This document shows, in pieces, positions 5,601 to 60,469 of a DNA stretch of 64,000 bases; within the stretch, counting starts at the first letter, position 1; each line of letters starts with the position of its first letter. The notes below the pieces were generated by a model. The model did no database searches, was not told the origin of the DNA, and worked only from the letters and a program-made list of their open reading frames with translations. The DNA is from Squalus acanthias. Taxonomy: Eukaryota. A program made the translations under genes and the position numbers. Where the stretch lies: the NCBI GenBank assembly GCA_030390025.1, contig CM059430.1, positions 62,496,001-62,560,000 on the forward strand. The letters run 5' to 3'.

Positions 5601-5859
5601 ACTGGGAAGGTAGATCACGTTCTCCCGCCCGCTGTTCGGACTGGACTACGCTCTTCCACCCACTCCGTTCAAACCTGCGCAACGTTCGCCCTCTCCTTCC
5701 CCACCAACACCACCCAGACCGCAACAGTTCAAGAAGGCAGCTCAATACCATACACTCAAAGGCAAATAGGGATGGGCAATATATAAATTAATGCTAAATA
5801 TGAGAGCGTATTCTGTGTTGGTCCTATAACCTGAATAACATTACATTTATGTTTTATTT

Positions 5860-6646: not shown

Positions 6647-6690
6647 CGGCTCTTCACGGCGGTTCGGTCTCGTTACACATTCTTCTTTAA
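6647..6690 (-). CDS. Gene A exon 5, short cytoplasmic exon
   Basis: ttttcag|(V)KEECVTRPNRREEP|gtacgt. It is 44 nt, phase 1-0, and conserved with 50869-50912. Confidence 0.8.
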
Positions 6691-7348: not shown

Positions 7349-7462
7349 CGTCATTATTCTGCAGTCGGCACCACGTCCCAATGAAGATCATTAGCACTAG
7401 AAACGCCAATCCACCCACCGCACACGCAGAAGCCCAGAAGTAAAGTGAATTATCGACAATAC
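7349..7462 (-). CDS. Gene A exon 4, transmembrane exon
   Basis: cttgcag|GIVDNSLYFWASACAVGGLAFLVLMIFIGTWCRLQNND|gtaaga. It is 114 nt, phase 1-1, with no charged TM residue. Confidence 0.88.
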
Positions 7463-8482: not shown

Positions 8483-9229
8483 GGCCCAGAAATTAAAGAC
8501 GGAGCCTTCCTGCGGGGGTAAGGCTTCCCCGCGATATCTCACTGCACGCCTGCATTTTCCTTCTGAGCTCACACGAACTTTATTATCAAGACTGCAGCTG
8601 TGCAGTGTGTGCGTATCCCACAGACGCAGTTAGTTCGTGCGAGCTGTGGGATCACGTGATTCAGTTAGAGCCAATGGCAGCACACCATCTTTTATTCATA
8701 GTTTTCACAGCAAGGGCTGTCAAAGCTATGAATCTATACCCCCCCAAAAAGAACAGCTAAACCTCAATTATTATTTTTTTTTTAAAAACATCACATTAAT
8801 AAAATAAGTATAGTTAAATAAATTAACCACTTTAAACAAAAAATTAAATTTTTGAAAAAATTTAAAATCTTTTTAAAAGTTATAAAAATAAACTTACCTT
8901 TCTTTAAAGTCTCTAAAAAAGATATACCTGTTGAAAAAAATTCAAAATTATACTTAATTAACTACTTACCTTGTTAAAAGAGGGTCTTACGCCTCCTTTC
9001 TTCATGTGCAAAATCTTCCATGCTAACCTGCGCGTTCAAAGCACTAAGTGCACTGCGTGGGCGCAGCCTGTAGCGTGCACGCGGTTCACTTAGGAACCGC
9101 CCCCTTTTGAAATCACCAAGTGCCGGTTTTCAGCGCATGCGCATTGCATGCAGAAAACCGGCAATTGGAGACAGAATACGCGAGAGTACACAGTGCGTAC
9201 TCTCGCGTACTGAGACTAATTTTTGGGCC
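8483..9229. mobile_element. Harbinger-like MITE in gene A intron
   Basis: TIRs GGCCCAGAAATT / AATTTTTGGGCC with an ATT TSD. It has GC-rich arms and an AT-rich core, and is an inverted near-copy of 38473-39216. Confidence 0.8.
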
Positions 9230-9380
9230 ATTATAACATGAATTTAATGCTTTGGTTGAAATTCCTCATGAGACTTCCGTGGACTGTCTTCATGATTATT
9301 AATAAGTGCAAACTGTACGATATATCTCTTTACGAATTTAACAGTGGCTGGCTCTCCTTTTTGGTCTGTTCGCTTCATAC

Positions 9381-9693
9381 CTTGGTTAGATTTAGAAACA
9401 GTATGGGTGACAAGAGCTGGAGTCTCGTGAGAGACATGAGAAACCAAACAGTTATAACGGGCGTCGCTCGGAACAGGCTGTGTCTCAACCAAAGAGCTGG
9501 AAACTTCAAACAGTCCCTCCGTGTTCTGCACTTTCCTGGTATGTATTCCTAATGCAGTTTCGATGCCATTTTTATACCAAGTGAGGGTGAAATTCTCCGG
9601 AAAAAAACGCAGCCGTTTCAAACACAAAAGACAGAGAAGCAGGCGAATTCCCTTCAGGTGTCCTGGAGACAATCTTCAGTGGGGTTGGGGCCG
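9381..9693 (-). pseudogene. Gene A exon 3, C1-set Ig domain, frameshifted
   Basis: Reads AAPTPLKIVS...FVFETAAF then FFPENFTLTWYKNG...GLFEVSSSL...YNCLVSHVS, with C1 motifs F.P..(I/F)...W.KNG and Y.C.V.H. The exon is 313 nt (+1, in the A7 run at 9601-9607). The B-strand Cys is TTT (Phe). Confidence 0.9.
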
Positions 9694-10211
9694 CTGCGGA
9701 ACAGAGATTGCACAAAGTCGAGTTACTGGGCACCATTGGGAAATTCAATACTATTCTGATTTACGTTCGGTACATTTTATTACAACAGCACCATTCGAAA
9801 GCGCAGCCTCCTGTCCATTTAATGTTACGCTCATCATCTACACACACCTGATCCATATCTCTCATAGACGCCCGCATCTGTACAAATTTACCCGCGCTAT
9901 CAATCCAAGCCTTTGAGTTACTTAGCAGACAAGCCGCAAAGATTTGCTAATCAATGTTAGCTTTTCAAAGTCCAAAGAATTAAGCAAGTAAACCTCGGGG
10001 CAAGTTTGCGCGCTGAGTCCCTCCGTATTAGGAACAGATAGACAGTGACCAGTAATCTGCACATTGTGGGTGGCAAAATGAGGGGCCCAGTCGGTATCGG
10101 ACAGATTTCACAGCCGAAGCATGACAATTGGTGACAGAAATGATAATCGGTTGAACCTCGGGAGGTTTCAGCAACACAGTTCCTCGGTACTGTTTAAAGT
10201 ATTGGGGATTC

Positions 10212-10860
10212 ACAGAATCAAAGAATCACAGAAATTTACGGCACGGGAGGAGGCCATTTGGCCCATCGTGTCTGTGTCGGCCTAAGAAGAACTATCCAAC
10301 CAAATCCCACTTTCCAGCTCTTGGTCCGTAGCCTTGTAGATTCTGGCACTTCAAGTGCATATCCAAGTACTTTTTAAATGTGATGAGGGTTTCTGCCTCT
10401 ACCACCCTTTCAGACAGTGAGTTCCAGACCTCCACTACCCTCTGGGTGAAAAGATTTCTCATCAACTCCCCTATAATCCTTCTACCCATTACTTTAAATA
10501 TATGCCTCCTGGATATTGACCTCTCTGCTAAAGAAATAGATCCTTCCTATCCACTCTAACCAGGCTCCTCATAATTTTATACAGCTCAATCAAGTCTCCC
10601 CTCAGCCTCCGCTGTTCCAAAGAAAACAACCCCAGTCTATCCAATCTTTCCAAATAGCTAAACTTCTCCAGACATGGCAACATCCTCGTAAATCTTCTCT
10701 GTACCCTCTCTGGTACAATCACATCTTTCCTGTAATGTGGTGAACAGAACTGTACGCAGTACTCCAGCTGTGGCCTAACTTGTGTTTTATACTGTTCAAG
10801 CATAACCTCCCTGTTCTAACATTCATTGACTCGGCTAATAAAGCAAAGTATCCCGGACGC
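10212..10860 (-). mobile_element. CR1 LINE 3' end
   Basis: Motifs VRPQLEYCVQF, ERVQRRFTRMLP and FTQRVVEVWNSL, plus a GATTCT-type tail. Confidence 0.92.
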
Positions 10861-11382
10861 CTTTTTAGGTTAGTGAGGTGACAACGTTGTGTGTTCCAAG
10901 CTCCAATTTGTTGAGTGAAGACGTTGATCAACAGTTAGTTTCACCCTGGCTTTCTAATCCCTGACGCTAACATTATGTGAGAATTAATTTCAGGAATGTT
11001 AAACCGCAGAGACAGCGATGGGGGCAGACAAAGCATCAGTATTGGACTAAGAGCCGTGTATATGTTGGGAAAGTTGTATTAACATAAATGATTTCCAGTC
11101 TTGCAATTTGTTCAGAAATTCCGCTATCAGACATCTGGTGTGTAAATTGTAGAGTTATAGTCTAACTGGTTAATATTGATACATTTTGCATTACTCTGCC
11201 TGTGACATTGAATATCTAATTAGCAGTTCTACACAGAGAACACGAACATACAACTTAACTTACCTAGAAATGTATTATTAGGCATGTGTATACTTCCAAA
11301 GGCGGTGCAATAAAACAATCACAAAACATCCCCGTTTGTTATGTTCGATATATTTACGACTGTGCCAATCTCCTGTGTTTCA

Positions 11383-11681
11383 CACTTACTATTAGATGTG
11401 ATCCGGTTCCATTTCCTCGAACTATTCCCCGATGGAACACTGCACAGTGATAGACTCCAGAATCTTGGAAAGTCGCGCTCAGCAACTGAAAGAACCCGCT
11501 CGCTTTCTGTTATCGGCGCTTGTGCGCAGGTATTCATTTTCACCCTGTTTCCAACAATACACTCTTACGTTGGAATTGTCCTGCGAGATGGGGAACAAGC
11601 AGTATAAGGTGATGTTCCCCCCTCTGGATACAGTCGCTTGTTTTGGCACTTGAGTCACTCTGAACGTATTGTTGTCCGCTG
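11383..11681 (-). pseudogene. Gene A exon 2, V-set Ig domain with J-like end, frameshifted
   Basis: Acceptor ttctgacag. Reads AADNNTFRVTQVPKQATVSRGGNITLYCLFP...WKQGENEYLRTSADNRKR, then after a ~22-nt deletion FFQLLSATFQDSGVYHCAVFHRGIVRGNGTGSHLIVS. The 3' donor is not canonical, so the end is approximate. Confidence 0.88.
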
Positions 11682-11844
11682 CTGTCAGAAAATATAGTCA
11701 AGTACAGGTAATTGGTATTGGAGATGACCTGGAGATAGAAGACAGAAAAAAACCTAGATAGAGATATTGCGGTTCACTAAATGAATGTGGAAACTACTTC
11801 GGATATATAAATTAAAGTAGCTGGGACAATGAATAAAGAGTTAC

Positions 11845-11899
11845 CTGTCTATATAATCTGCCGGAGTGTCAGGCACAGGAAAAGCAAAGCCGCCGACAT
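11845..11899 (-). pseudogene. Gene A exon 1, signal peptide with in-frame stop
   Basis: Translates as MSAALLFLCLTLRQII*T with a phase-1 donor G|gtaact. The TAG is at 11851-11849. It aligns to the gene B leader. Confidence 0.8.
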
Positions 11900-47011: not shown

Positions 47012-47072
47012 ATGTTTTCGACTGTGATGTTTATTTTCCTGTTCCTGTCTCTCCCGGGGATCATTTGCATAG
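47012..47072 (+). CDS. Gene B exon 1, signal peptide
   Basis: Translates as MFSTVMFIFLFLSLPGIICI with a phase-1 donor G|gtccct (weak donor). Confidence 0.8.
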
Positions 47073-47227
47073 GTCCCTGTTTATTCTCAAATCGAGCTGT
47101 CTCGATAAATATAATTAGTCGGTCTGTATTCTTTTAACGCTTTTTAATTTCCATGTAGAAATGCATTTTAAAGTGTTTAGTTCCGCATAGAATACACTTA
47201 AGCAACTTTGAATATATTTTCTAACAG

Positions 47228-47548
47228 CTGCTGCGTTCTCTTCGATCAGCGTGTCTCAAAAACCCAGAAAAGTAACTGAATTAAGGGGGACAAACATCAC
47301 CTTCCAGTGCTTAGTCCCCGAGTCCATTCGCAATTCAGGGATAGAATTGCGTTGGAGGAAAGAGGGTGAGAATGAATATCTGCAAAGAGGAGCAGATAGC
47401 AGAAAAAGATTTACTCTGAAAGATAATGGATACTGTTTTTTTGAGTTACTGAACGTGGCTTTTCGGGACTCTGGAATTTATCACTGCGCAGTGATCCATC
47501 AGGGAAGAATTATTGGAAAAGGCACAGGATCACATCTAACTGTGAACG
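47228..47548 (+). CDS. Gene B exon 2, intact V-set Ig domain with germline J-like segment
   Basis: ctaacag|...VSQKPRKVTELRGTNITFQCLVP...LRWRKEG...DSGIYHCAVIHQGRIIGKGTGSHLTVN|gtaagt. It is 321 nt, phase 1-1, with canonical C, W, D-x-G-x-Y-x-C and GxGT. Confidence 0.93.
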
Positions 47549-48035
47549 GTAAGTGACCGGAGTGAGCGGGAACGTCCAAATGTATCAAATGTAACAAGGA
47601 TGATGTTTTGTCATTGTTTTATTGCACCGTCTTTGATATTATAAAACAATATATTAATACATTTACAGTGAAACTCTGCACACAGCTACTAATTATGCGG
47701 CATAATATGACGCTTCATTTGCTGAGTTGTGTAAAATTCCAGCAATATTAACCAGATTAAGTAACATGTTACTCGATTCATCTCAAAACGTAATTTTTAC
47801 ATCCGACTTCTGAAGATGGAAGTTGCGGAACAAATTCCACATATATTGATGACTGGCTGAAAATATTTTCTATTAATGCACCACTCCCGCCATAAATACG
47901 GCTCTCTTGCGGAGACAGACAGACAGACCCAGAGTTACAAACAAACAGAGAGCGACTGAGGATACCATTGTTCTTCCATATCTTATGTTTAATATCGCCC
48001 AAGTAACTTGATTTTCTCCATTCTCTTTTTCGCAG

Positions 48036-48346
48036 CTGCCCCAACTCCATTGAAAATTTCCCCTGGGACACCGAGAGCAATTCATCTGCGATTCTGACTC
48101 TTGTGTGTGAAACGGCTGAGTTTTACCCGGGCGATTTAACCCCCGTTTGGTATAAATATGGCGTCGAAACCGCAACTGGGATAAATTACACTAAACGGCA
48201 GAACACTGAGGGACTGTATGAAGTTGCCAGCCCTTTTGAAGAGACGCAGTCTGTGCCGAACGGGGCTGTTTACATCTGCTTGGTATCTCATGCCTCCCTT
48301 CGGACTCCCGCCATTGCCAGCTAAGCAGTTTTCAATTGCGACCCAG
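48036..48346 (+). pseudogene. Gene B exon 3, C1-set domain, frameshift and nonsense
   Basis: The exon is 311 nt (-1 near 48060-48075). It reads LTLVCETAEFYPGDLTPVWYKYG...YICLVSHASL with a premature TAA at 48322-48324, and donor CCAG|gtacga. Confidence 0.9.
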
Positions 48347-50068
48347 GTACGAAGGCATCAGGCCAAGAAGTGAGGTCAGCTACTGTTATATTCTGAAAGG
48401 GTATTTCATAGAATTTGTTTATATTGATAAACATACATTTATTTTGAAAATACGCCCAGGAAACAGCAAAGCAAAGAGAAAATTAATGTTTCAATGTAAA
48501 ATATTGTTGACCCGGACCCGGTGTGAAGCCGAAGTGTTATTATCGCCCTTCACCCAGTAACTGCCTATTAAACCTCATCAGCTTCCAATTGTTAAAACAA
48601 ATACGTGCTGGCTGGTTATCTCTTCTATGCAATTATTTTACATTTCTTGCTTATTACTAAACAATCAAACGTTTGCTTTTGTTAAACTGAATTCATTTTT
48701 TCCCATTTCCTGGTTCCTTACATGAGTTGCAGGACTAGAAGCGACTGTTCGTTTGTCTGGTCTCGAGCATCTCTGAATCCCGCCTCTGATGGGCGATTCA
48801 CGGTGAGGGCTTTTACACCGTCATTGTTACCAAACACCAGCTCATTTCCTGTGTTCCCAGGTCTCGCATTTCAGTTACGAAATCGCCTTCTACCCAAGGG
48901 TGCTGGATAAGCCGAGCAACCAAGAACACACACACTAAAGTTCCATTCTCTTCCCAAATTCCAGTACTCCCACACACGACAACATGATTAATCCGAGATC
49001 TTACCTTCTCCCATTCTGTTCAAGCTTACATCCCCCTCTAACTTTCATGTTCGAGATCCATTCCGTTGGTACCTCCTGGCCCCAGCTCTGCTGACCCCAC
49101 TTCCAGCCACACACATATTCTGTCAAACATTATTTTATATCATATTAATTAATTAATTTATAACAATTATAAACAACAGTTTATCACTTGTATCCGATTA
49201 TATTTCCTCACCTGTTTATTATTAATACTTATTCAATTTATTTCGTTTCAATTTTAAGATCGTTTTATTCCTTACCATTGCCTGCTGTCCTTGTACCAAG
49301 ACTGTTACCAGGAGCTGCAGTCACGCTGCTTGCACTTGGGCTTCTTCCAATGCAGTTCCTGATCCTCATCCCCCTATCGGCTAATTCTACTGTAGAGATC
49401 TGAAATTAACCCCTGGCCAGCTTTTACTCCTCACCCGTCCATGTCATAACGGGTTTAATTGGAATCTGTCTCATAAATCTCATTTAACCTGTGCCCGCAA
49501 CCTGGCGACAGTTCAACCGGTTCGATACGTCATATTGTGAAGAACTCTTTGCCACGAAGGGCAATAATCAATGAACCATTGCCCGTTGATAGCCCTTACT
49601 ATTCAGTGACCTTCTTACTGTAATAAACAAAGGTCAGGTAATTGAAAGGGGATTCTTAACCGATGGCTGCAACCCAGAATTTTGTGCCGGCAACGAAGAA
49701 ACTCTTGTGACGCATTTGCCTCCAATTTCCTCAAACTATATGTTAATAAATAAGAAACGTCAAGAATAAGTCTTTTGGTCATGGGAAATTGATCTCTCTC
49801 GTATTCTAACTCTCTTAAAACAGTGCTGTGAGATCCCGAAACCGGTAGTGCGTTGTGCAGATTAATCCCGAATGTCTGATCCATCCGACGAAGAAGTTAC
49901 TTCAAAGATGATATCTAAAAGAAATAACATTTTGTATTTAATCTTTCTTATTGCCGTTCTATACCGCCGAGTTACTGAAAGAAACATCATAGCTTAACTA
50001 ATAAACTATCTTGAGGCCTATTCTTAGCCAACGCCCGCCATAACTTAATGTTCCTATTAATCTTACAG

Positions 50069-50182
50069 GTAGTGGCGATAATTCACTTTATATCTTGCCT
50101 CCTGGGTGTGCGGTGGCTGGATTGGCGTTTCTGGTGCTAATGATTTTCATTGGGACGCGGTGCCTACTGCAGAAGAATGAAG
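50069..50182 (+). CDS. Gene B exon 4, transmembrane
   Basis: cttacag|GSGDNSLYILPPGCAVAGLAFLVLMIFIGTRCLLQKNE|gtaaga, 114 nt. Confidence 0.88.
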
Positions 50183-50868
50183 GTAAGATCAACTGTAAGC
50201 CCTTTATTTTATTACAAACCCTCCGGGTTAGTGACAGTCTCCGGTAACATTGGGGAAGCAGAACTCGATTAGGACTTAAAGATGAAAACAGTGTTATCTG
50301 TTTCAGGAGCACGGATTGTTCCAAATACATTTTAAAACACTGAATTGCTCAAAGAATCGTAATAAAAATTGAAATAATTATTTGGATGTTTGCAACAGAA
50401 GTGCCCCCTTTGCAGCATAATAAATGACATGTACCCTGACACACAATCACTTTCCAACTCATTCTGTTACGGATGCGCAACTAGTTTGAGTGAAAGCGTG
50501 TGAGGATCCGGCCGGGGATTGGTTGTATACATAAGAACATAATAAATAGGAGCAGTGTTAGGCCGTACTGCCCTTGAGCCTGCTCCGCCATGCTAATCCT
50601 CTACCGCAACACCATTTTCCCGCCCTATCCCCATATCGCCTGATCCCCTTAATGCCCACAAAGATTCCCTTAGTTTCCGAGAAATTTCAAAAAAATCCAC
50701 CATTGCTGATCGCTACAAGTGCTGGGATTTCAAACACTATCGGCACAATCCGGAATTGGAAATCATGTTCGGCTTTGGCTGACTCTAGAAATGTATTTGC
50801 AATCACTGACATTGAAACTGAGTAAATGTTGCAATCTTTCAATATCATTAAATTTCATTCGTTTCCAG

Positions 50869-50912
50869 GTACAGGAGAATGTGTAAGGGGACCGAACCGC
50901 CGTCAAGAGCTG
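50869..50912 (+). CDS. Gene B exon 5, short cytoplasmic exon
   Basis: tttccag|GTGECVRGPNRRQEL|gtacgt, 44 nt. Confidence 0.8.
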
Positions 50913-51164
50913 GTACGTCCATTCATCCATCCCGGTCGACGGTTGAAATGTCAAGAAAGATTGCTATAATGGAAAGATTATATCATAGTCACGTCAGAAC
51001 AGTTTACGTCTACTGACTTAAAGTATTTGTCCGGTCTTAGTGAGTCATTCAAATCATGGTTAGAAATATACTTGGCACCCGGAGCGTTACTGAAAAAATT
51101 GTTCAATGGGAGAGAAGAAACTGTTTGTTTCGTTGAAAAAGTTCCTGGGTAATAACTGCTTGTA

Positions 51165-52374
51165 GAATCATAAGAACATAAGAAATGGGGGCAGGAGTAG
51201 TCCATTCGGCCCTCCGAGCCTGCTCCGCTATTGAATAGGATTATGGCTGATCTTTTACTTCGAATCCACGTTCCCGCACTGTCCCTATTTCCCTTGGTTC
51301 CCTCAGTATCCAAAAGTCTATCCATGTCTGTCTGCAATATTCTCACCGACTGAGCATTCACAGCCATTTGGGATGTATAATTCCAAAGATTCACAACACT
51401 TTGAGTGAAGAAATTTCTCCTCATCTCAGTCCTAAATGACCGAACCCTTATTCTGAGACTTTGAACCCTAGCTCTAGACTCCCCAGCCGGGGGAAACAGC
51501 CTCCCAGCATCTACCCTGCCAATCCACTTCAAAATTTTAGACATTTCAATGAGATCACCTCTCCTTCTTCTAAACTGTAGCGAATAAAGGTCTAGTCTAC
51601 TAAATCTCTCCTCCTAGGACAAACCCCCATCCGAGGAATTAGCCTAGTGAACCTTCGTTACACTCCCTCTAAGGCAAATATATCCTTCCTCAGAAAAGGA
51701 ATACTCCAGGTGTGGTCTCACCAAGATCATACATAACTACAGTAAGACTTCTTTCCTCTTATACACCAATCCTTTCGTAATTAAGTCTAATATACCATTT
51801 GTTTTCCTAATTGCTTGCTATACCTGCATGTTGACTTTCTATGATTCGTGTATAAGGAGACCCTGCTCCCTCCGAACACCAACATTTTCCAATCTCTCAC
51901 TATTTAAAAAATATTCTGCTTTTCTATTTTTCCTACCAAAGTTGATAACTTCACATTTCTGCACGTTATATTCCATCTGCCATGTACTTGCCCACTCACT
52001 TAACCTGCCTACATCCCCATGTAGCCTCTTTGCGTCCTCCTCACAACATACTATCCCATGGAGATTTGTATCATAAGCAAACTTGAATAACTTACACTTG
52101 GTTCCCTTATCTAGGTCATTGATATAGATTGAAAATAGCTGAGGCCCAAACAATGATCCCTGAGATACCCCACCAGTTATAGCCTGCCACCCGAAAATTA
52201 CCCATTTATTCCTATTTTCTGTTTTCTGTCCGTTAACCAATCCTCAATCCACGCTAATATTTTACCTCCAATCCCATGAGCCCTAATTTTATGTAATATC
52301 GTCTTGTGTGGCACATTATCGAATTTTTTTTGTAAATTCAAATGCACTACATCCACCGCTTCCCCCTTATCTAC
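51165..52374 (-). mobile_element. CR1 3' half, cut by the ERV LTR
   Basis: RT and C-terminal motifs; it ends abruptly at the LTR TGTAAG at 52375. Confidence 0.9.
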
Positions 52375-52850
52375 TGTAAGATTTGGATCACAGGTCGCAC
52401 ACAGTTTACCCAAAGGGTCTTAGGTGCTGTAATGCATTTTATTAAGGAGTGAGAGTTTAAGTTAAGTACAACACGCAATCAAGATAGACATAGTAGAGAT
52501 ACGACCGTGACAAGCAGTTGGTATTGGTCCCGATCGGACAGACGGCTGGCGTGCGCGAACAGCTCTTCCCTTCCCTTCACCATCTGTGCTAAAAGCTCTT
52601 TAGATATCTCTTTTACTCTATTTGTAGGGGTGGGCCCAGTGTAGATTATTAAAGATACAGTCAACAACCTTTCTAGCACACAAACAGCAGACAGCTAGTC
52701 TAGAAACAAGGTCACCGCCACGGTGCAGAATGCTATAAATTCCACAGGGAACCAAGAACTAAGCAAATTCCGTCTATCCAGTTATTGTAACACCCGTCTG
52801 AAGAGAATTTGTTGTCTCAAGTTATTTTTTCCAATTCATGATTTCTTACA
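52375..52850 (-). mobile_element. 3' LTR of element 2
   Basis: Termini TGTAAGA...TCTTACA, preceded on the minus strand by PPT AAGGTGGGGAGT. Confidence 0.88.
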
Positions 52851-53279
52851 ACTCCCCACCTTGAGAAGGAAATATCCTATTGAGTTCGCACAACCCTCTT
52901 TTGACTAATTTAGCTCCTTCTAAGTTATCGGCCCGCTGATAACATTCGTGCCCAGCGATGCTAGCTGGCATTATAAGTTAGTTGCCACCACTCGTAGTCC
53001 GTAAATTTGCTTATTGCTTTCTCAACTTGGGCAATAGTTATTAGGGAGACTCAGAAATGAAGATTAACCCCTTCCTTACGGTCCATTCTTTTGAGGGGGA
53101 GGAGCAACTTCTGACCCTTCACACAGGTTCAGTTCACTGTTCCGGTGTTCCAATTCTGCCCCGCCTGGGGTATCCTCTTTTTCTTCTATCTTTCCTGATC
53201 TTACCCCGCCTGGGGTGTCCTTTACTTTGCTTCGGATCTTCTCTTTGAGTGTGCTCAATTAATTTCTTCATGCTGGTTA

Positions 53280-54450
53280 GTCATAAGCATGTGTACACAA
53301 TTGGCTGGTGCATCAAAGTCTTACTACACAGGTTACATATATCAAATACACTATCAATACAAGTTGGAGATCTACCAGCGCGTGTGAAATAATACGAACA
53401 TAGGGTGTGCTGATATATTAAGCCCAATATCCCACCAGTGCGAATCTTCCCCTATGTTGTCAATTTCAATATCTATTCTCGAGTTGTCCTGCTCCAAAAC
53501 ATAAAGATGCTTGAGGGAGGAGTTCAGTCACATCACAAGTTCACTGAAGCCGTTAGACAACAGGGGTGTCTTGCCCGAATTATGCAGCTCATACTTAAGT
53601 GTCTCATTTACTGTCAGTTTCAGTTGAGCATAGGTTTTGATACTGAGTAAAACGTGTTGGTTGATGGTTGTGGGTACATGTGGTGTGAAGCAGAAACTGG
53701 GGCTATTAATTGGACAGGTCCTGTTAGACCGATAAAGCATACTAGTTGCGGTAGTAGTGACACAGGAGGCACCACCAAAAGCACCTCATACTGGATTCGT
53801 ACTGGTTTTTCTCACACTCTGTTACCTACAAAACACAATTAGTACAGTCACAGTTAAATTCAGTCTTACAATAATTATAAGCGACACTAAAGTTTAACAT
53901 CGAGTCAACAAACAATGGACTTAAAAGATTCTCCAGATCTCTTTTACCCGTATCCATCTTGTGGATTATTCTTGCTAAGTATGATTTCTCCGTAGCCTCA
54001 ATTGTCCCAATCAAAATTCCGTGCAATTCTCCGCTTCAACTTCAATTTCAATCCCTCTAATAGGTACCAGTGTGTTTAACTCTATTTAGATTGTTTCACT
54101 GCTTAGATACTTTCTCGATGGAGTATGTGTCAGTGCTTTAAACGTTGTCGCACTCTCCTGAGCCACATTAACCATTTCATGTCATGCTGTTGTCAAGTAA
54201 CTGAGCATGTCTGAGACCCGTTCTTCAGTGCGGATTCACCATGCATTTCCGGATGGTAATTGCTTCATACATAACAAATCAATATCATGCCACGTGTGCC
54301 ATCCGATACAAGCCATTCTTGGGCTTTCAGCTGATCTTATCAAAAGATTGTCTGGAGATCTTTGCTCATCTTCCATCGCATGGTATCGGGTAGTGGCCAA
54401 ACTATCAAATTCAGTTTTCTTAAAAAGTTCATTATAGGCAGGGACACAGA
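53280..54450 (-). pseudogene. env remnant of element 2
   Basis: A basic site KLKRR, Cys-rich segments (CKTEFNCDCTNC; SCVTT..CPINSPSFCFTP), and HWWDIG followed by a hydrophobic TM-like stretch. Confidence 0.65.
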
Positions 54451-56074
54451 TGTCTCCAAGAGAAAGCTATCAATTTACTATTCTTAACTATACTTTCCTG
54501 ACTTTCACTGGAAAGTTAGGAAAATTCCCATTTGATAGTGTAATTTTCCTGTTTCAATCTTACATCTTAAGTGGGGCATGCCATTAATAATTATTAATAT
54601 CTCATTCATGAGCCCTGGAGGAATTTTACTGTCCAATACAATATTACGGATAGAAAACATAGATCAAAGTTTCTAGCTGAACGAATTAAAAAAAATCCAA
54701 CTGCCAGCGGAAAGGGTTAACTCCTTTGCAGCTTTTCAGAAGGCGGAGCAAATATTGTCAGACACAGACAATTGTGTCACTTCACGTAAATTTTAAAAAC
54801 TTTCCCGATCGAAAAAGACAGTTGGGTTTTCACAATTTAATAGGTTAGTTAACTTTAATAATCCCAATTTAATTTTATTAACTAAACACTATACAGAAAA
54901 GATAATATAAATCAAATTAAAACACAGTAAGTTACATAATATTTCTCTTTGTTCTTTCTTCAGATGCCTTTTCAAATGACAGTAAAAATATTGAATACAA
55001 CTGGAGAAAAATTAGTTTTCACACTTAAATTAAACAAATCAAACTGCTTTGGAAAGTTCACGACAGCAACCGCAACTCCAAGGTTAAATCTTAGTCTGAA
55101 ACTTAATCATTTGTTGAACAAACTTTTTGTTTTTCTCAGGTTTTCCACACCAGCTTAACTTAAATTTTAGTTCAAAGTTTTATTTTTCAATTCTGGGTGC
55201 ACAATCTTATTCGCACATTCTTAAAACTTCCAAAATTCAAGACAAGACTACAACGTGTTAAATGGCTTTTAGCACATAGAAGTGGGTGGAGATAAAACAC
55301 ACATAACAGACACTTTCTTTTAAAGACAGACCTTCAGACGAAAGGAATACTGTTACTTCCCAAACACTCACAGATGCTTTGCAAAAGGATATCAAAGTTC
55401 ACACTGAAAACAAATAAAAACCAATAGAACAGCAGAAAAGAAATATGATCTCCCCTTTTCTCTTTTATTCCATCCTAATTATTTTATCCTTTCACCCATA
55501 AACCAACTTTCAGTTTCTAATGTTTTCTACTGCATCTCATTCTTAACTGATTACTGCCACTGGGAATCTGGGAGAGTAGGGTGGGTGTCTCCAGAACCAT
55601 CGGGGTACACACGGGGGTGACTGAATTGAGTTTGTGATAGTCAATAGTCATCCGATAATCACCCGGTTCTCTAACCGACCAAACTAGGGAGCTGGTCGTG
55701 AAAGTGCCTTTGCAAACAACACCCTGCTTTAGCTCCAAGGGAAGGGATCCTTGTATAGTTGTCTGGATTGAATTGTCAAAGTCCTATAAAACTTGGGGCT
55801 CACCCTTTTTAGGATCGGGGTGGGGATCGTGAATGATGGTGGTGGAGCAACCGGAGTTGAATCACAATAATTGTTGACGGGATCCAGAATCAACAGTTGG
55901 GACTACCGGTCTCCCACCACCATTATATCGGAGAGGGGAAATCATCTCTCCCTGAGAGACCTGCAGGAGTCATAGGGGAGGTGGAAGGTCTGCTGTTTGC
56001 TCTGGTTGTTGATGCAACGCGACAACCTGTCGGGCTCCCTGGCCGTTGGTCAAAGCTGCTTCCATTCTTTCCAG

Positions 56075-57637
56075 TCATCGTTCTAGTGAGTCGAGGCCTG
56101 CCTGTCTGGGGGGGTTGTGACCATTGTTGCATTGACGGGCATAGTGGCCTAGACGTTGGCAGAGATTGCAGCACACTGAAGTACGTTTCCCTGGATTTCT
56201 AGATGGCCCTGACTTTTGCTTAGGCAGCGAGCCTTCAACAGCCACTACGGCAAACTTGGCAGGTATCACAGGGATATTGGCACGGGTCTGATCCCAAGCA
56301 GTCCTGACACGGGCGAGTATTTGGTCCCACTCGATGTTTTTAGAGACATAAATGCGCAGCGCATTACGGACCAGCGGTTGGAGGTCGTTCAAAAAAAGGG
56401 TTCTGAAGCCCGAGTCGTTGAAGTAATTCCTTCCACCCCACCTGTTGCACTGTAAGATGCCATGAAGTTTATGCACAAAGGCATTCGGGCTTTCGGTAGG
56501 GCCCTCTTTAGTGCAAGCTAGATGCTGGTGAAAATCAATGCTCTCTTCCCCTAGAGTTTGGCATAGTTCTAACTCAATCTCATCTATTGTGCTCCACCCC
56601 CACCCCACTCAGGATATCCAGGTCCATTTCTTGTTTTAATCCAGAGGAACATGCTTCCAGGGGTGCCTCTTTGAGGCCGTCCCCTTCTAGTTCTGGTTGG
56701 TTGATTATAAAAATCCTCCAGCATTGCCTGACGTCGAGGGAGCTGATGTCCATGTCCACCACCCCCAGGTTAGCCTTTAGCTGCACCACTTCAACCGCGG
56801 AAAGGGACGGATGTGTGGTTGTGGTAATGGTTTCTGCCTCTCTACTAATGGTGATCGAGGAGGTTGCCTCGCCTTTCAGGTCTCGGTCAGCCTGGCGCCT
56901 GGTCTCGCATGGTGCCTTAGCTCGGGTGACCACACATACTGGTATGCTCCCCCCCGCCTCGCCATCCTTGTATCGTGGTGGCGGAGCTAAGGGAACAGAG
57001 GGAGCAGAGGGAGTACTGTCCCCAATTATGTTGTCACAGCAAAGGCCAGGATCTTTTGGGTTTGTCTTGAAGACAGCAGCCATTACTGCCCGTTGTTGAC
57101 CAATTTTTGCCTGCAGCTGTTGGATTTTTTCAAAGCACGGGCCATGGTCTGCTTGGGGGGAGGCAGTGGATTGGCGCCAGTTTAATTCCCTTAACGCTCC
57201 ACTTGCATACTCTAGCTCCACACTCAATCTGGTGTTTTCTGCCTGTAGTTCAATATTCTGCTCAAGTATTTGAGCTAGTTTCTTTTATGTACATGACATT
57301 TTGTCATGAATCTTTTGCTCCCAGCGCGACTGGTTGCGGAGGGCAGAAAGCTTCTCACGCCAATCACTTCTTTCTCTCTGCATTTGGCCGACTTAACCTT
57401 TTAACTCTTTAATCTCGCTGTTTAACTTGGCAGCGCACAAGTGTGCCCCGTAGGCTAACCTGTCACGGCCTCTCTTATTTTAAGTTTGTTTTTCTGAACA
57501 ACCTCAGAGAGTTTATCAAGGATGTAGTCATAGTCCCCGTTACCATCTTCTAAGATTTTTAGGAGGTTCGCTGCTGTGGCGGTGCCGACTTTTTCTGTCA
57601 GGCTGTTCCCGATGGTATGCCAACGCCATTGTACCAC
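56075..57637 (-). pseudogene. gag remnant of element 2
   Basis: ORFs 57455..57637, 56580..57227 and 56075..56608 carry a PSAP/PPRY proline-rich segment, an MHR-like segment and a CCHC knuckle. Confidence 0.8.
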
Positions 57638-57775
57638 TGGTTTTAACTTTACCCAACTCTCTCCCTATCCCTTATTTCAGGGAATTCTTCTACTTCGTCT
57701 CAAGTGATGATCACGTGCGGTCGACCAAGTCCCTCTGGTCTCTACAACCAGAACATTACAACTCCCAACTCTCTG

Positions 57776-57793
57776 ATTCCACTTCTGACACCA
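57776..57793 (-). promoter_or_regulatory. Primer binding site, tRNA-Leu
   Basis: TGGTGTCAGAAGTGGAAT lies next to the LTR end and is 1 mismatch from the complement of the tRNA-Leu(CAA) 3' end. Confidence 0.85.
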
Positions 57794-57794
57794 T

Positions 57795-58150
57795 TGTAAC
57801 ATTTGGATCACAGGACAGGAACAGATTACCAAAGGGTCTTAGGAGTTGTAAGGCATTTTATTAAGAAGCGGCAGTTTAAGTTAAGTACAACACGCAATCA
57901 AGATTGACATAGTAGACATACGATCGTGACAAGCAGCTGGTATCGGTCCCGATCAGTCAGACTGCTGGCGTGTGCGAACAGCTCTTCCCTTCCCTTCATC
58001 GTCTGTGCTAAACGCTCTTTAAATATCTCTTTTACTTTCGTTTTAGGGGTGGGCACAGGGTAGATTATCAAAGATACAATCAAGAACCTTTCAAGCACAC
58101 ATACAGCAGACAGCTAGTCTGGAAACAAGGTCACCGCCATGGTGCAGAAT
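57795..58150 (-). mobile_element. 5' LTR of element 2 (U3 end deleted)
   Basis: It matches 52375-52730 colinearly. Confidence 0.88.
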
Positions 58151-58154
58151 TTTA

Positions 58155-58243
58155 TATCGAAGACTTTTTTGTGTTTCCTTCGGATGTCTGCATTGAGCAG
58201 CAGTCCAGAGAACTTGCAAAGCTAAAAATTAGCAATATTCCCA
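58155..58243 (+). repeat. Remnant of a second cytoplasmic-exon module (intron 6 fragment) in gene B
   Basis: GAGCAGCAGTCCAGAGAACTTGCAAA is shared with 60231-60256. Confidence 0.75.
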
Positions 58244-59330
58244 TGCGCCTGCTGCCCTTATCCTTCTCGGTGGAAGAGGTCGCGAGATTGGGAGGTGCTG
58301 TCGAACAAGCCTTGGCGAGTTGCTGCAGTGCATCTTGTAGAAGGTACAGACTGCAGCCACGGTACGCCGGTGGTGGAGGGAGTGAATGTTTAAGGTGGTG
58401 GATAGGGTGTCAATCAAGCGGGCTGATTTGTCCTGGATGGTGTCGAGCTTCTTGAGTCTCGTTGGAGCTGCACTCATCCAGGCAAGTGGAAAGTAATCCA
58501 TCACACTCCTTACTTGTGCTTTGTAGATGGTGGAAAGGCTTTGGGGAGTCAGGAGGTGAGACACTCGCCGCAGAATACCTACCCTCTGACTTACTCTTGT
58601 TGCCACAGTATTTATGTGGCTTGTCCAGTTAAGTTTCTGGACAATAGTGACCCACAGGATGTTGATGGTGGGGGCTTCGGCGATGGTAATGCCGTTGAAT
58701 ATCAAGGGGCGCTGGGTAGACTCTCGCTTTTTGGAGATAGTCATTGCCTGGCACTTATGTGTCGTGAATATTACCTGCCACTTATAAGCCCAAGCCTGGA
58801 CGGCCTCCAGGTCTTGTTGCATGCGGGCATGGACTGCTTCATTATCTGAGGAATTGTGAATGGCACTGAACACTGTGCAGTCATCAGCGAACATCCCCAT
58901 TTCTGACCTTATGATGGAGGGAAGTTCATTGATGAAGCAGCTGAAGATGGTTCGGCCTAAGGACACTGCCTTGAGGAACTCCTTCAGTAATGTCCTGGGG
59001 CTGGGATGTTTGACCCCAACCACCACAACCATCTTCCTTTGTGCTAGGTATGACTCCAGCCAGTGGAGAGGTTTCCCCCCGATTCCCATTGACTTCAGTT
59101 TTACTAGGGCTCCTTGATGCCACACTGGGTCATCAGCTGAATTGATATCAAAGGCAGTCACTTGCACCTCACCTCGGGAATTCAGCTCCATTGTCCATGT
59201 TTGGACCAAGGCTGTAATGAGGTCTGGAGCCGAGTGGTCCTGGTGAAACCCAAACTGACCATCAGTGAGCAGGTCATTGGTGAGTAAGTGCTGCTTGATA
59301 GCACTGTCGATGACACCTTCCACAACTTTC
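58243..59330 (-). mobile_element. LINE RT fragment (second family)
   Basis: ORF 58229..59323 contains FADDC and KAQVRSVMDY. Confidence 0.92.
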
Positions 59331-59339
59331 AGAAGTACG

Positions 59340-59715
59340 ATTTATTTACTAATGCTAATTTCTTTAAGGTCCTCATTCTATCTAGAACCTTGGTTCCCCA
59401 CTATTTTGTCTTGTTCCGTAAAGACAGATAAAGAATATTTGTTTAGTATCTGCTAATTTCTCTATTTTCCTGACTGAAACTGTGCCCGACACTACAACTA
59501 CTGTTAGGGGCCGGTACACTACTCCCACCAATGTTTTCTTTCCCTTGTTGTTTCAAAGCTCCAACAAAGTGATTCTACATCTTGATTTTCCGAGCTAAGA
59601 CCCTTTCTCTCTATTGTCTTTATCCCATCCTTTATTATCAGGGCTTCCGGCCCTCCTTTTCCATTTTGCCTACCTCTTCTAAAAGTTAAGTACCCTGCCA
59701 TATTTAGTTCTTGGT
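59340..59715 (-). mobile_element. CR1 fragment, inverted counterpart of part of 1370-3250
   Basis: It matches the reverse complement of ~1370-1600 joined to ~3150-3270. Confidence 0.75.
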
Positions 59716-59985
59716 TTTGGAAAAAAACGTTATGTTCTAAAGCTGCCGCTGATTTAAACAGTTCTGTAACACTGTGTTGCAGGGTGAACATTAACAGGTT
59801 TGAATATAAGTTACATGGCCCACAGTACCTTAACATTCGCACTTATCTAAATATGTATGAACTGTGGTTTATGCACTTGATCTTTAGCCTCGGTCAATCC
59901 GTTAAATGTTTGCTCAGCGGTACGTAAACTGGTGAAGGCAATGAACTAGCCACATAACCAAACTCTTTCTTTCTGACCCATGCAG

Positions 59986-60087
59986 GAAGCAGCGGCTGAG
60001 ACCGTGCATTATGCTGCATTAGATTTAAACAGAAGCCGGAAAACTCCAAGACGTGAAATTGAAGCGGAGAGAACCGTTTACGCTCAC
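59986..60087 (+). CDS. Gene B exon 6, ITIM exon with mutated donor
   Basis: catgcag|EAAAETVHYAALDLNRSRKTPRREIEAERTVYAH|ggagga, where GT is lost. Read-through stops at TAA 60130-60132. Confidence 0.82.
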
Positions 60088-60295
60088 GGAGGATTGAGTA
60101 ACAGATCAGAGAAACATCGATCGTCAGTGTAACATCAACATTCATGCGATAGCCGGGGGCATGTGTTTGCCCTGACTTTGACCGTGTGTTGTATCGAAGA
60201 GTATTTGTGCGTCCTTCTAATGCCTGCTTTGAGCAGCAGTCCAGAGAACTTGCAAAACGACCAATTAACAATATTTCCAAACGTTGGCTTCACAG

Positions 60296-60469
60296 ACCGA
60301 ACAAGGGACAGCCCGTGACAAACTGACGTACGCAGCTATAGCATTGACTGGCTCAGAGAAAACGGGGAAATATAAAAATAATGAACGAAGCTCAGAGTAT
60401 GCACAGCTGAAGACCAAAAAACAAAAAGGAGTAAAAGCGGCTGTCTACACAGAAGCAAGAATCAATTAG
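60296..60469 (+). CDS. Gene B terminal exon 7, ITIM plus ITSM-like motif
   Basis: tcacag|TEQGTARDKLTYAAIALTGSEKTGKYKNNERSSEYAQLKTKKQKGVKAAVYTEARIN*. Confidence 0.87.
   Translation, partial: TEQGTARDKLTYAAIALTGSEKTGKYKNNERSSEYAQLKTKKQKGVKAAVYTEARIN

What the first reader, a model, noticed from the sequence alone, without database searches (positions are those of the whole stretch)
47012..60469. Germline-joined VJ + single C1 receptor with a SIRP-alpha-type four-tyrosine inhibitory tail in a probable cartilaginous fish
Seen in sequence: seven spliceable exons encode leader, V with a J-like GKGTGSHLTV end in the same exon, C1-set domain, uncharged TM, and a tail with VHYAAL / TVYAH / LTYAAI / SEYAQL plus a terminal VYTE. 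The ORF track hides this because the pieces are spread over 13 kb. Established knowledge: non-rearranging VJ-C1 architecture is rare (SIRP, tapasin, B7H6-like) and is the proposed form of the pre-RAG antigen-receptor ancestor. The human SIRP-alpha tail has the same alternating order (ITYADL, TEYASI, LTYADL, SEYASV) but two C1 domains. Inference: this is an expanded family of SHP-1/2-recruiting V-C1 inhibitory receptors, possibly an uncharacterised SIRP-like lineage.
Basis: partly seen in the sequence, partly recalled or inferred. Interest (0 to 1): 0.9.

Follow-up and report, generated by a model that had tools for sequence, protein, structure and literature searches.

The report
Decayed shark SIRP-like V-C1 receptor gene
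This is a broken copy of a gene from a large shark and ray family of antibody-like surface receptors whose tails look built to switch immune cells off, much as the mammalian receptor SIRP-alpha does.

Summary

This copy does not read through. The C1 exon is 1 nt short, it holds an in-frame TAA, and the first tail exon has GG where relatives have the GT donor. A second, head-to-head copy at 0.6-11.9 kb is broken in at least four places.

The family is real. Intact V-C1-TM members with four tail tyrosines spaced 22/23-14-23 occur across sharks, rays and a chimaera. RefSeq names them inconsistently; SIRP-alpha-like is the commonest name.

Whether they are true SIRP relatives is open. PDB sequence and fold searches score SIRP-alpha level with Ig chains and UrIg2. 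Only a language-model look-alike search puts SIRP-alpha first.

RNA-like contigs show spliced leader-V and V-C1 joints from paralogues, none from this copy.

First-stage notes on other DNA of this genome already describe this family: 16 mention SIRP.

Verdict: a real, probably dead member of an undescribed but database-annotated SIRP-like family. Moderate interest.

The parts
47012..47072 (+). Gene B exon 1: leader (MFSTVMFIFLFLSLPGIICI plus 1 nt, phase 1), donor GT at 47073-74
   Evidence: The leader resembles the leader of P0001. A paralogue contig in run X6 joins about 47066 to about 47224.
47228..47548 (+). Gene B exon 2: V-set domain with a J-like G strand (GKGTGSHLTV) in the same exon; 321 nt, phase 1-1; intact
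   Evidence: Pfam V-set 1.5e-08, 35.3 bits. phmmer best hit 9.8e-34. No RSS consensus. It falls in a supported V clade (98/90) with proteins of five other species.
48036..48346 (+). Gene B exon 3: C1-set domain; 311 nt, where 312 is expected for phase 1-1
   Evidence: Pfam C1-set 9e-08, 32.8 bits. Best PDB match is UrIg2, 8.5e-11. Length and frames. Family alignment.
48072..48073 (+). Lesion 1: a 1-nt deficit. The frame that reads APTPLKISPGTP gives way here to the frame that reads ESNSSAILTLVCE...
   Evidence: Gene A and all aligned family proteins read straight through this place.
48322..48324 (+). Lesion 2: in-frame TAA, 22 nt before the exon's end. Aligned family proteins have Tyr, His, Phe or Leu at this position.
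   Evidence: Not verified by reads: every laid DNA contig reads C at 48324, but those I could inspect are paralogues.
50069..50182 (+). Gene B exon 4: stalk plus uncharged TM (LYILPPGCAVAGLAFLVLMIFIG) and RCLLQKNE; 114 nt, phase 1-1
50869..50912 (+). Gene B exon 5: juxtamembrane exon (G)TGECVRGPNRRQEL; 44 nt, phase 1-0
   Evidence: It matches GYDGRLTGGNRSEEL of P0012 and KEECDTGPNRSEEL of P0171.
59986..60087 (+). Gene B exon 6: tail exon 1 with VHYAAL and TVYAH, tyrosines 23 residues apart
60088..60089 (+). Lesion 3: GG where a GT donor is expected. Read-through adds 14 codons and stops at 60130-60132.
   Evidence: Gene A has cag|gtaaga and cag|gtaggg at the same place.
60296..60469 (+). Gene B exon 7: tail exon 2 with LTYAAI, SEYAQL and VYTE; stop TAG at 60467-60469
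611..11899 (-). Gene A: head-to-head paralogue, also a pseudogene. Exons: leader 11899-11845, V 11681-11390, C1 9693-9381, TM 7462-7349, juxtamembrane 6690-6647, tail module 1 4411-4310 and 4107-3973, tail module 2 1093-992 and 784-611.
   Evidence: Lesions: in-frame TAG in the leader; V exon 292 nt (frame lost); C1 exon 313 nt with the B-strand Cys replaced by Phe; early stop in tail exon 2 of module 1.
50434..50701 (.). High-copy short repeat inside intron 4, present in both gene copies
   Evidence: Summed contig depth 12,000-57,000 here against roughly 4-470 in the other bins of the DNA runs. Aligned between genes A and B.

Best explanation
Gene B (47012-60469, + strand) is a decayed copy of a receptor gene. 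It belongs to a multigene family found across cartilaginous fishes.

An intact member is built in seven exons:
- a leader;
- one non-rearranging V domain whose last strand is J-like;
- one C1-set domain;
- an uncharged transmembrane helix;
- a short juxtamembrane exon;
- two tail exons, each carrying a pair of tyrosine motifs about 23 residues apart.

In intact members the most likely working is as follows. The V domain binds a still unknown ligand. Src-type kinases then phosphorylate the tail tyrosines. Each tyrosine pair docks the tandem SH2 domains of SHP-1/SHP-2 type phosphatases, which damp activation of the cell. This is the SIRP-alpha way of signalling.

Other family members have Lys or Arg in the TM and a short tail, so the family probably works as inhibitory/activating pairs.

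Gene B itself most likely makes no full-length protein. Its C1 exon has lost one base and holds a stop codon, and the splice donor that should join the two tail exons is gone.

Shown here: exon anatomy, domain types, the lesions as they stand in this assembly, family membership, and intact relatives. Inferred: phosphatase recruitment, paired function, and pseudogene status, which rests on the assembly being correct.
For: Anatomy and lesions.
- The V, TM and juxtamembrane exons keep the expected lengths (321, 114, 44 nt).
- The C1 exon is 311 nt.
- The TAA is at 48322-24.
- GG stands at the donor place, 60088-89.

The neighbouring copy is dead too, and 9 kb of transposon-derived ORFs sit in intron 5.

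Family:
- The V exon finds 208 proteins at E<=0.001, 63 of them at <=1e-10.
- The family profile finds 35 of 5839 candidates, all chondrichthyan.
- One search finds 25 of 313 candidates, all chondrichthyan.

Intact V-C1-TM-four-tyrosine proteins include P0163, P0007, P0009, P0025 and P0174; P0018 and P0064 have six tyrosines. Tyrosine spacing is 22/23-14-23 in 7 of the 8 tails checked. Within each gene B tail exon it is 23.

Gene B's V sits in a supported clade (98/90) with proteins of Heterodontus, Mobula, Chiloscyllium, Scyliorhinus and Mustelus.

Structure model of P0007:
- two beta-sandwich domains, most 10-residue blocks at pLDDT 80-93;
- a TM helix at 232-260;
- a disordered tail.

Of 87 family-type proteins, 16 have K/R in the TM core and tails of at most 41 residues.

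Contigs of runs X6 and X7 carry leader-to-V and V-to-C1 joints at the predicted exon ends, from paralogues 92-95% alike.

The nearest named look-alike clusters in the ESM Atlas are SIRP-alpha, score 0.97.
Against: - None of the three lesions could be checked against reads. The DNA runs hold only 0.26-0.27 of the stretch's sampled words, and most contigs laid are paralogues.
- At 48324 all ten laid DNA contigs read C, which gives TAC (Tyr), not the window's A. I could inspect only the longest of these, records 2 and 12, which differ from the window at 13 of 154 places. The stop could still be an allele or an error.
- The 1-nt deficit could be an assembly slip.
- No phosphatase binding, ligand or expression data exist for any member.
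- In most members the second tyrosine motif (TVYAQ followed by T or N) is neither a textbook ITIM nor an ITSM.
- The hydropathy scan for charged TMs is crude. Some of those proteins may be truncated gene models.
Confidence: 0.7

Rival explanations
1. The family is the cartilaginous-fish counterpart (orthologue or sister lineage) of tetrapod SIRPs. SIRP-alpha-type receptors would then date to the first jawed vertebrates, with one C1 domain as the older or a reduced state.
For: - The alternating four-tyrosine tail has conserved spacing.
- The V domain is VJ-type and is followed by a C1-set domain.
- Charged-TM, short-tail partners exist, as with SIRP-beta (SIRP features read in passages of PMC12975943).
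- RefSeq's naming pipeline picks SIRP-alpha or SIRP-beta for 13 of the 35 hits.
- The ESM Atlas ranks two SIRP-alpha clusters first (0.97, 208-209 of 256 features).
- SIRP-alpha 2wng is rank 4 of 256 PDB hits for P0163 (3.4e-14) and rank 2 for P0071.
- In the fold search 2wng superposes at 4.3 A over 214 columns, against about 10 A for Ig light chains.
Against: - The same searches score UrIg2 and Ig chains as high or higher.
- The V exon alone shows no SIRP among the best 60 of 73 PDB hits. The C1 exon alone shows none among the best 60 of 509.
- The tail alone finds only 2 of 41 candidates, both family members, and nothing in the Atlas.
- No bony-vertebrate protein with this architecture turned up among the 30 hits that I looked up.
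- The one V-C1-C1 member seen (skate P0071) has two nearly identical C1 copies, which is a recent duplication and not the SIRP d2/d3 pair.
- No phylogeny with SIRPs and no synteny could be run.
Confidence: 0.3
2. The family arose inside cartilaginous fishes from germline-joined Ig light-chain clusters (leader / VJ / C exons) that picked up TM and tyrosine-motif exons. It would then be a secondary, post-RAG product, and the likeness to SIRP-alpha would be convergent.
For: - The exon plan, leader / VJ / C1, is that of a germline-joined light-chain cluster (shark lambda clusters being germline-joined is stated in a passage of PMC12227049).
- The C1 exon's best PDB matches are UrIg2 and an Ig chain filed as IgA1 heavy chain (2rcj_C), ahead of MHC II beta; no SIRP is among the 60 shown.
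- RefSeq calls several members 'immunoglobulin lambda-1 light chain-like': P0035, P0086, P0180, P0073.
- Unchecked first-stage notes place VJ-C1-TM-ITIM genes inside Ig light-chain arrays of this genome.
Against: - The G strand has K or N where antigen-receptor J segments have Phe or Trp: [KN]GTGSxLxV.
- The V exon's PDB matches to light-chain V regions are weak, at 1e-4 and worse.
- The family is present in the chimaera Callorhinchus as well as in sharks and rays, so it is at least as old as crown chondrichthyans.
- The notes on light-chain linkage were not tested and may concern another family.
Confidence: 0.2
3. Gene B still makes a product. Either the lesions are assembly errors, or the C1 exon is skipped (phase 1-1, so the frame is kept) and the tail ends by read-through after exon 6. 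That would give a V-only receptor with one ITIM (VHYAAL).
For: - The leader, V, TM and juxtamembrane exons and their splice sites are intact.
- A natural V-TM-tail protein without C1 exists in Callorhinchus: P0005, 268 aa.
- Some RefSeq models of relatives read on past a tail or juxtamembrane exon, as gene B would: P0038, P0039, P0013.
- No read evidence confirms the stop codon.
Against: - None of the 65 contigs of runs X6 and X7 laid on the stretch is 99% or more alike; the 0/19/12 and 0/16/18 split is. No joint from 47548 to 50069 was seen.
- Three independent lesions of three kinds, next to a neighbour with at least four, fit decay better than error.
- Gene B has a long terminal branch in the V tree, 0.43 against a median of 0.27.
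Confidence: 0.12

Closest known systems
SIRP-alpha / SIRP family (PTPNS1, SHPS-1, CD172a) of tetrapods
   Same: - A non-rearranging V domain with a J-like last strand, followed by a C1-set domain.
- A single-pass, uncharged TM.
- A tail with four tyrosines in alternating motifs, suited to SHP-1/2.
- Relatives with a basic TM residue and a short tail.
- V-only forms exist.
SIRP features come from passages of PMC12975943 and PMC2785349.
   Different: - One C1 domain, not two.
- No sequence affinity above that to Ig chains and UrIg2.
- Dozens of diverged members per genome in several V clades.
- Ligand unknown; no test of CD47 binding.
- The copy in this window is broken.
UrIg / UrIg2 (non-rearranging shark antibody-like genes; PDB 9dmx)
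   Same: Both are found in cartilaginous fish and have a single-exon VJ domain followed by C1-type domains. UrIg2 is the best PDB sequence match of the C1 exon (8.5e-11) and of P0163 and P0071.
   Different: UrIg has three C domains and is secreted. UrIg2 has nine or more C domains. Neither has a tyrosine-motif tail in the passages of PMC12227049 that I read. The present family has one C1 and an ITIM-type tail.
Germline-joined Ig light-chain clusters of cartilaginous fish
   Same: The leader / VJ / C1 exon plan; C1-set constant domain; some members are named lambda-like by RefSeq.
   Different: The present family has TM, juxtamembrane and tail exons and lacks the Phe of the J motif. There is no evidence that it pairs with a heavy chain.
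Other ITIM-bearing multigene IgSF receptor families (teleost NITRs, skate MDIRs, mammalian KIR/LILR; named from memory)
   Same: Clustered, fast-turning-over families with inhibitory and activating members and many pseudogenes.
   Different: As I recall, those families lack a C1-set domain. I did not test this here. NITRs are known from bony fish only.

Membership tests
SIRP family | N-terminal V-set domain with a J-like G strand, encoded whole in one exon | tested here: met
   Pfam V-set 35.3 bits against a cut-off of 26. One open exon, 47228-47548, ends GKGTGSHLTVN before gtaagt.
SIRP family | [quoted passage not shown] | tested here: not met
   One C1 exon lies between the V and TM exons. 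The aligned relatives have one C1. The only V-C1-C1 protein seen, P0071, has two near-identical copies.
SIRP family | Cytoplasmic tail with four tyrosine motifs that recruit SHP-1/SHP-2 | tested here: inconclusive
   The motifs and the 22/23-14-23 spacing are present in 7 of 8 intact tails and in gene B's two tail exons. In gene B the donor joining the two exons is missing. Phosphatase binding cannot be tested with these tools. The human motifs are recalled from memory.
SIRP family | Closer in sequence or phylogeny to SIRPs than to other V/C1 proteins | tested here: inconclusive
   PDB E-values for P0163: UrIg2 3.6e-15, Ig heavy chain 2.7e-14, SIRP-alpha 3.4e-14, SIRP-gamma 8.2e-11. The exons alone show no SIRP among the 60 rows shown. 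The Atlas puts SIRP-alpha first. No SIRP sequence could be fetched for a tree.
SIRP family | Conserved synteny with SIRP loci; CD47 as ligand | not testable with these tools
SIRP family | Paired members with a basic TM residue and a short tail (SIRP-beta type) | tested here: met
   Family level only. 16 of 87 proteins have K/R in the central 15 TM residues and tails of at most 41 residues, for example P0178, P0181 and P0138. This was a crude scan.
Rearranging antigen receptors (Ig/TCR) | V and J as separate segments flanked by recombination signal sequences | tested here: not met
   V and the J-like strand are contiguous in one exon. There is no exact consensus heptamer or nonamer in 46901-48400. 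Degenerate signals were not scanned.
UrIg / UrIg2 | VJ domain followed by three or more C domains, with no inhibitory tail | tested here: not met
   Gene B has a single C1 exon and tyrosine-motif tail exons. UrIg features are from passages of PMC12227049.
C1-set immunoglobulin domain (Pfam PF07654) | Score above the family's gathering cut-off | tested here: met
   32.8 bits against 21 for gene B, 28.8 for gene A, and 47-87 for intact relatives.
Functional protein-coding gene | An open frame through all exons with usable splice sites | tested here: not met
   C1 exon of 311 nt, TAA at 48322-24, GG at the exon 6 donor. This rests on the assembly; reads gave no verdict.

The most novel reading that the evidence does not exclude
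This family is the surviving cartilaginous-fish branch of the lineage that gave rise to tetrapod SIRPs. A non-rearranging VJ-C1 receptor with a duplicated two-tyrosine, SHP-docking tail module, together with charged-TM activating partners, would then already have existed in the first jawed vertebrates. It would have sat beside the rearranging antigen receptors and possibly been physically linked to light-chain clusters. That would move the origin of the SIRP family from tetrapods to the base of gnathostomes. A table passage of PMC13262535 lists the SIRP family under Tetrapoda. It would also give a living two-domain model for the pre-RAG antigen-receptor form.
Probability: 0.25. Interest if true: 0.7.

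Novelty: new variant of a known kind. Interest (0 to 1): 0.4.

Why it matters
C1-set domains are almost confined to antigen receptors, MHC molecules and a few associates. SIRP-alpha has been discussed as a link to antigen-receptor origins (abstract and passages of PMC2785349).

A large, old shark, ray and chimaera family that joins a VJ domain, one C1 domain and a SIRP-alpha-style inhibitory tail gives two things:
- a testable candidate for how old the SIRP kind of signalling is;
- a second non-rearranging VJ-C1 lineage to set beside UrIg in the debate on antigen-receptor origins.

The copy in this window adds little by itself. It is a dead member, useful mainly as a record of gene birth and death in the cluster. 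The family deserves a proper phylogenetic and synteny study, and its RefSeq names need tidying: alone shows seven different names besides 'uncharacterized'.

Tried and rejected
1. A tail-only protein search (P0007 residues 266-368) gave 41 candidates. Two passed E<=1, both family members. The word-based search cannot reach SIRP tails, so a blank means little.

2. A tail-only Atlas search gave no usable hit.

3. Fetching SIRP, Ig light-chain, TCR or tapasin sequences for V and C1 trees failed. None of my three homologous-protein searches nor the representative search returned any.
   - That tree had 64 rows: gene B's V plus 63 domain rows cut from the 57 proteins whose species I knew.
   - Matches covering fewer than 80 query positions were dropped. 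P0009 is one such row.
   - Seven rows are C1 domains and serve as an outgroup.

So I have no genomic context, synteny or exon check of relatives.

5. Reads:
   - The DNA runs are thin and dominated by paralogue contigs, so they give no verdict on the lesions.
   - The two runs guessed to be RNA are small (about 130 million letters) and hold nothing 99% or more like gene B.

6. I considered an alternative acceptor to rescue the C1 frame. No AG in the right phase exists, and gene A and all relatives use the same acceptor. Rejected.

7. I considered SIRP-type V-C1-C1 architecture on the strength of skate P0071. Its two C1 copies are near-identical. Rejected.

8. The species was not determined. 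The best matches to the window's exons are:
   - Heterodontus francisci P0001, 60% to gene B's V;
   - Heterodontus francisci P0171, 84% to gene A's C1;
   - Heptranchias perlo P0204, 86-88% to pieces of gene A.
   No stored protein is identical.

9. Literature. Seven answered searches found no paper describing a shark SIRP-like V-C1 family.
   - The PRARP and NITR searches returned only unrelated papers.
   - The review by Dornburg and Yoder (Immunogenetics 2022) is not held.
   - Many immunology journals are outside the library, and supplements were closed and not consulted. The family may be in print where I could not look.

I built, typed and searched no joined coding sequence or protein.

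Full report
WHAT IS THERE

The stretch 47012-60469 holds, on the + strand, seven exon-like pieces with the order and phases of an IgSF receptor gene. I call it gene B. A script, working from the sequence read, gives these bounds:

- leader 47012-47072, 61 nt, ending in phase 1
- V 47228-47548, 321 nt
- C1 48036-48346, 311 nt
- stalk and TM 50069-50182, 114 nt
- juxtamembrane exon 50869-50912, 44 nt
- tail exon 1 59986-60087, 102 nt
- tail exon 2 60296-60469, 174 nt including the stop

All six acceptors are AG behind a pyrimidine-rich run. Five donors are GT; three of them read gtaag or gtacg.

The domain calls are sound:
- Pfam gives V-set at 35.3 bits (cut-off 26) for the V exon and C1-set at 32.8 bits (cut-off 21) for the C1 exon.
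- The V exon runs without interruption into GKGTGSHLTVN, whose GTGSHLTV fits the GxGxxLxV bulge of J segments.
- No consensus recombination-signal heptamer or nonamer lies in 46901-48400.
- The TM is uncharged.

The juxtamembrane exon was found by aligning the two gene copies. It matches the same short piece in relatives.

THIS COPY IS BROKEN

There are three lesions.

1. For phase 1-1 the C1 exon must be a multiple of three, as the V and TM exons are. It is 311 nt. The frame entered from the V exon reads APTPLKISPGTP and then meets a stop. The rest of the domain (ESNSSAILTLVCETAEFYPGDL...YICLVSH) is in the next frame. The switch lies between 48072 and 48073, inside a Pro codon that gene A and all relatives read through.

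2. An in-frame TAA sits at 48322-48324. The aligned relatives have Tyr, His, Phe or Leu there.

3. After tail exon 1 the window reads GG. Both tail modules of the neighbouring copy read GT in an otherwise alignable context. Read-through would add 14 codons and stop at 60130-60132.

Intron 5 is 9 kb long and full of reverse-transcriptase-like and other transposon ORFs.

A SECOND DEAD COPY

Gene A lies head to head at 11899-611 on the - strand. It has:
- an in-frame TAG in the leader;
- a V exon of 292 nt with the frame lost;
- a C1 exon of 313 nt in which the B-strand cysteine is a phenylalanine;
- two tandem tail modules, the first with an early stop and the second intact.

The two copies are about 66% alike in DNA over the V exon and its flanks and 72.5% over C1. 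They are 80-82% alike from intron 3 onward, introns included. The two halves therefore have different histories, which suggests recombination or gene conversion in the 3' half.

THE FAMILY

The V exon was scored with HMMER against 1.84 billion representative proteins. It finds 208 at E<=0.001 and 63 at <=1e-10, the best at 9.8e-34.

The single-domain hits of 220-410 residues share one plan:
- a V domain ending [KN]GTGSxLxV;
- PPTPLKI...LVCETAxFYPxxxxLTWYKNG...YTCLVSHxSL, a C1-set domain;
- a TM;
- a short acidic piece;
- then xVxYAxLDL...ERTVYAQ...KLTYAxLxL...TEYAxL.

Taxonomy:
- I looked up 30 proteins by name, and 27 are chondrichthyan.
- The other three are a carp butyrophilin, a turtle 'polymeric immunoglobulin receptor-like' protein and a viper protein. 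They have other architectures.
- A profile of 16 members found 35 of 5839 candidates, all chondrichthyan.
- A search with P0001 found 25 of 313, all chondrichthyan.
- The species include the chimaera Callorhinchus, sharks of several orders, and skates and rays.

RefSeq's automatic names for the 35 hits are a mixture:
- 11 tyrosine-protein phosphatase non-receptor type substrate 1(-like), that is, SIRP-alpha
- 6 tapasin-related protein-like
- 2 CD276 homolog
- 2 signal-regulatory protein beta-1-like
- 2 NCR3 ligand 1-like
- 1 Ig lambda-like
- 1 class II beta
- 10 uncharacterized

Intact proteins that join the Ig exons to the tyrosine exons exist in other species, for example P0163 of Heptranchias perlo. 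Its tail is about 60-70% identical to gene B's tail exons.

In 7 of the 8 tails examined the tyrosines are spaced 22/23-14-23; the eighth, P0197, lacks the third tyrosine. Gene B keeps 23 within each tail exon. Counting residues to the exon ends, the middle gap would be 14 if the two exons were spliced.

A V-domain tree built inside the family puts gene B's V in a supported clade (98/90) with proteins of Heterodontus, Mobula, Chiloscyllium, Scyliorhinus and Mustelus. The relatives of gene A form a separate supported clade (97/97). V types are thus older than the split of shark orders. Gene B's own branch is long: 0.43 against a median of 0.27.

A hydropathy scan found 16 of 87 family-type proteins with Lys or Arg in the TM core and tails of at most 41 residues. 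That suggests activating partners.

READS

Eight runs of the same coded organism were listed, none on record as RNA.

DNA runs:
- They hold about a quarter of the stretch's sampled words.
- They yielded 1140 and 562 short contigs on the 4 kb laid. Most are 90-99% alike and cover introns as well as exons.
- That fits many close paralogues, but it gives no verdict on the lesions.
- At 48324 all ten contigs read C. The ones I could inspect are paralogues.

The two small runs guessed to be RNA gave:
- a contig that skips from about 47066 to about 47224, which is leader to V;
- a contig whose loose end reads as the end of a V exon set directly against the start of the C1 exon at 48037.

Both contigs are 92-95% like gene B. 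Relatives are therefore spliced as predicted. None of the 65 contigs from these two runs is 99% or more alike, so there is no sign that gene B itself is expressed.

WHAT IT IS LIKE

PDB sequence searches:
- The C1 exon matches UrIg2 best (8.5e-11). Next come an Ig chain filed as IgA1 heavy chain (2rcj_C) and MHC II beta. No SIRP is among the 60 of 509 hits shown.
- The V exon has only weak matches, and no SIRP among the 60 of 73 shown.
- Whole proteins score UrIg2, Ig chains and SIRP-alpha within one order of magnitude: P0163 gives 3.6e-15, 2.7e-14 and 3.4e-14. P0071 gives similar values.

Structure:
- An AlphaFold model of P0007 has two confident beta-sandwich domains, a TM helix and a disordered tail.
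- Foldseek ranks PD-L1, Ig light chains and SIRP-alpha all near 1e-14.
- The extended two-domain arrangement superposes on PD-L1 and SIRP-alpha at 4.2-4.3 A, and on light chains at about 10 A.

The ESM Atlas look-alike search puts two SIRP-alpha clusters first (0.97). That is a lead, not a test.

The tail alone reaches nothing outside the family.

So the family works like SIRP-alpha on paper, by its architecture and the design of its tail. It fails one defining SIRP feature, the two C1 domains, and its descent is open.

Two family-level rivals stand: a true SIRP sister lineage, or a secondary derivative of germline-joined light-chain clusters. The second is suggested by the exon plan, the C1 matches, some RefSeq names, and unchecked scan notes that place such genes inside light-chain arrays.

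LITERATURE

Seven answered searches found no paper on this family. What I read, always as passages found by search:
- PMC12227049 on UrIg and UrIg2;
- PMC13262535, which lists the SIRP family under Tetrapoda in a table;
- PMC11599192, which lists SIRP among joined-VJ IgSF members;
- PMC12975943 for SIRP features;
- PMC2785349 for SIRP-alpha's C1-set domains.

Supplements were closed. Much of the immunogenetics literature is not in the library.

EARLIER NOTES OF THIS SCAN

First-stage notes already describe this family elsewhere in the same genome. 16 notes hold 'SIRP' and 115 hold 'ITIM'. They include copies 17 and 30 kb beyond this window's end and a note on this very stretch proposing a V-only product. 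I used them as leads only.

VERDICT

- The gene is most likely a pseudogene, subject to the assembly being correct.
- The family is genuine, old, large and undescribed in the papers I could search, though it is annotated in databases.
- Its kinship with SIRPs is the interesting open question.

Noticed in passing
window 611-11899 (- strand): A second family member (gene A) lies head to head with gene B, about 35 kb away. It is dead too: TAG in the leader, a 292-nt V exon, a 313-nt C1 exon with the B-strand Cys replaced by Phe, and an early stop in one tail exon. It carries two tandem copies of the two-exon tail module (4411-3973 and 1093-611).
   Followed up: yes
window 46726-51013 against 12173-6550: The two copies are 65-72% alike in DNA over the leader, V and C1 exons and their flanks, but 80-82% alike from intron 3 to the tail, introns included. 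The 5' and 3' halves therefore have different histories: recombination between family members, or gene conversion of the 3' half.
   Followed up: partly
window 50434-50701: A short element in intron 4 has summed contig depths of 12,000-57,000 in the DNA runs and 230-590 in the small RNA-like runs. Neighbouring bins of the DNA runs lie mostly around 30-170. It is a very high-copy repeat (SINE-like?) present in both gene copies.
   Followed up: no
window 50978-59323: Intron 5 of gene B is filled with transposon remains. These include reverse-transcriptase-like ORFs on the - strand at 51839-52413 and 58229-59323 (364 aa) and long ORFs at 56075-57227. Copies of the 58.2-59.3 kb piece recur at 18.6, 25.8 and 33.7 kb of the window.
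   Followed up: no
family proteins P0178, P0181, P0182, P0138, P0101, P0037, P0079, P0081, P0091 and others: 16 of 87 family-type proteins have Lys or Arg in the core of the predicted TM and tails of 5-41 residues. This is the pattern of activating partners that borrow an adaptor, so the family looks like a paired inhibitory/activating set.
   Followed up: partly
protein P0071 (Amblyraja radiata, 493 aa): This is a V-C1-C1 member whose two C1 domains are almost letter-for-letter repeats. That points to a recent exon duplication or an assembly duplication, not the diverged d2/d3 pair of SIRP-alpha.
   Followed up: partly
proteins P0038, P0039, P0013 and P0001: Several RefSeq models of relatives run on into what is intron in their kin, after a tail, juxtamembrane or C1 exon. 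These are either mis-modelled or natural short-tail isoforms. Gene B's lost donor would give the same kind of end.
   Followed up: no
protein P0005 (Callorhinchus milii, 268 aa): A family member with V joined directly to the TM and a three-motif tail, without a C1 domain. V-only forms therefore exist naturally or as splice variants.
   Followed up: no
window 27375-33118: Another first-stage note reports an env-bearing LTR element between the two receptor copies. I did not look at it.
   Followed up: no
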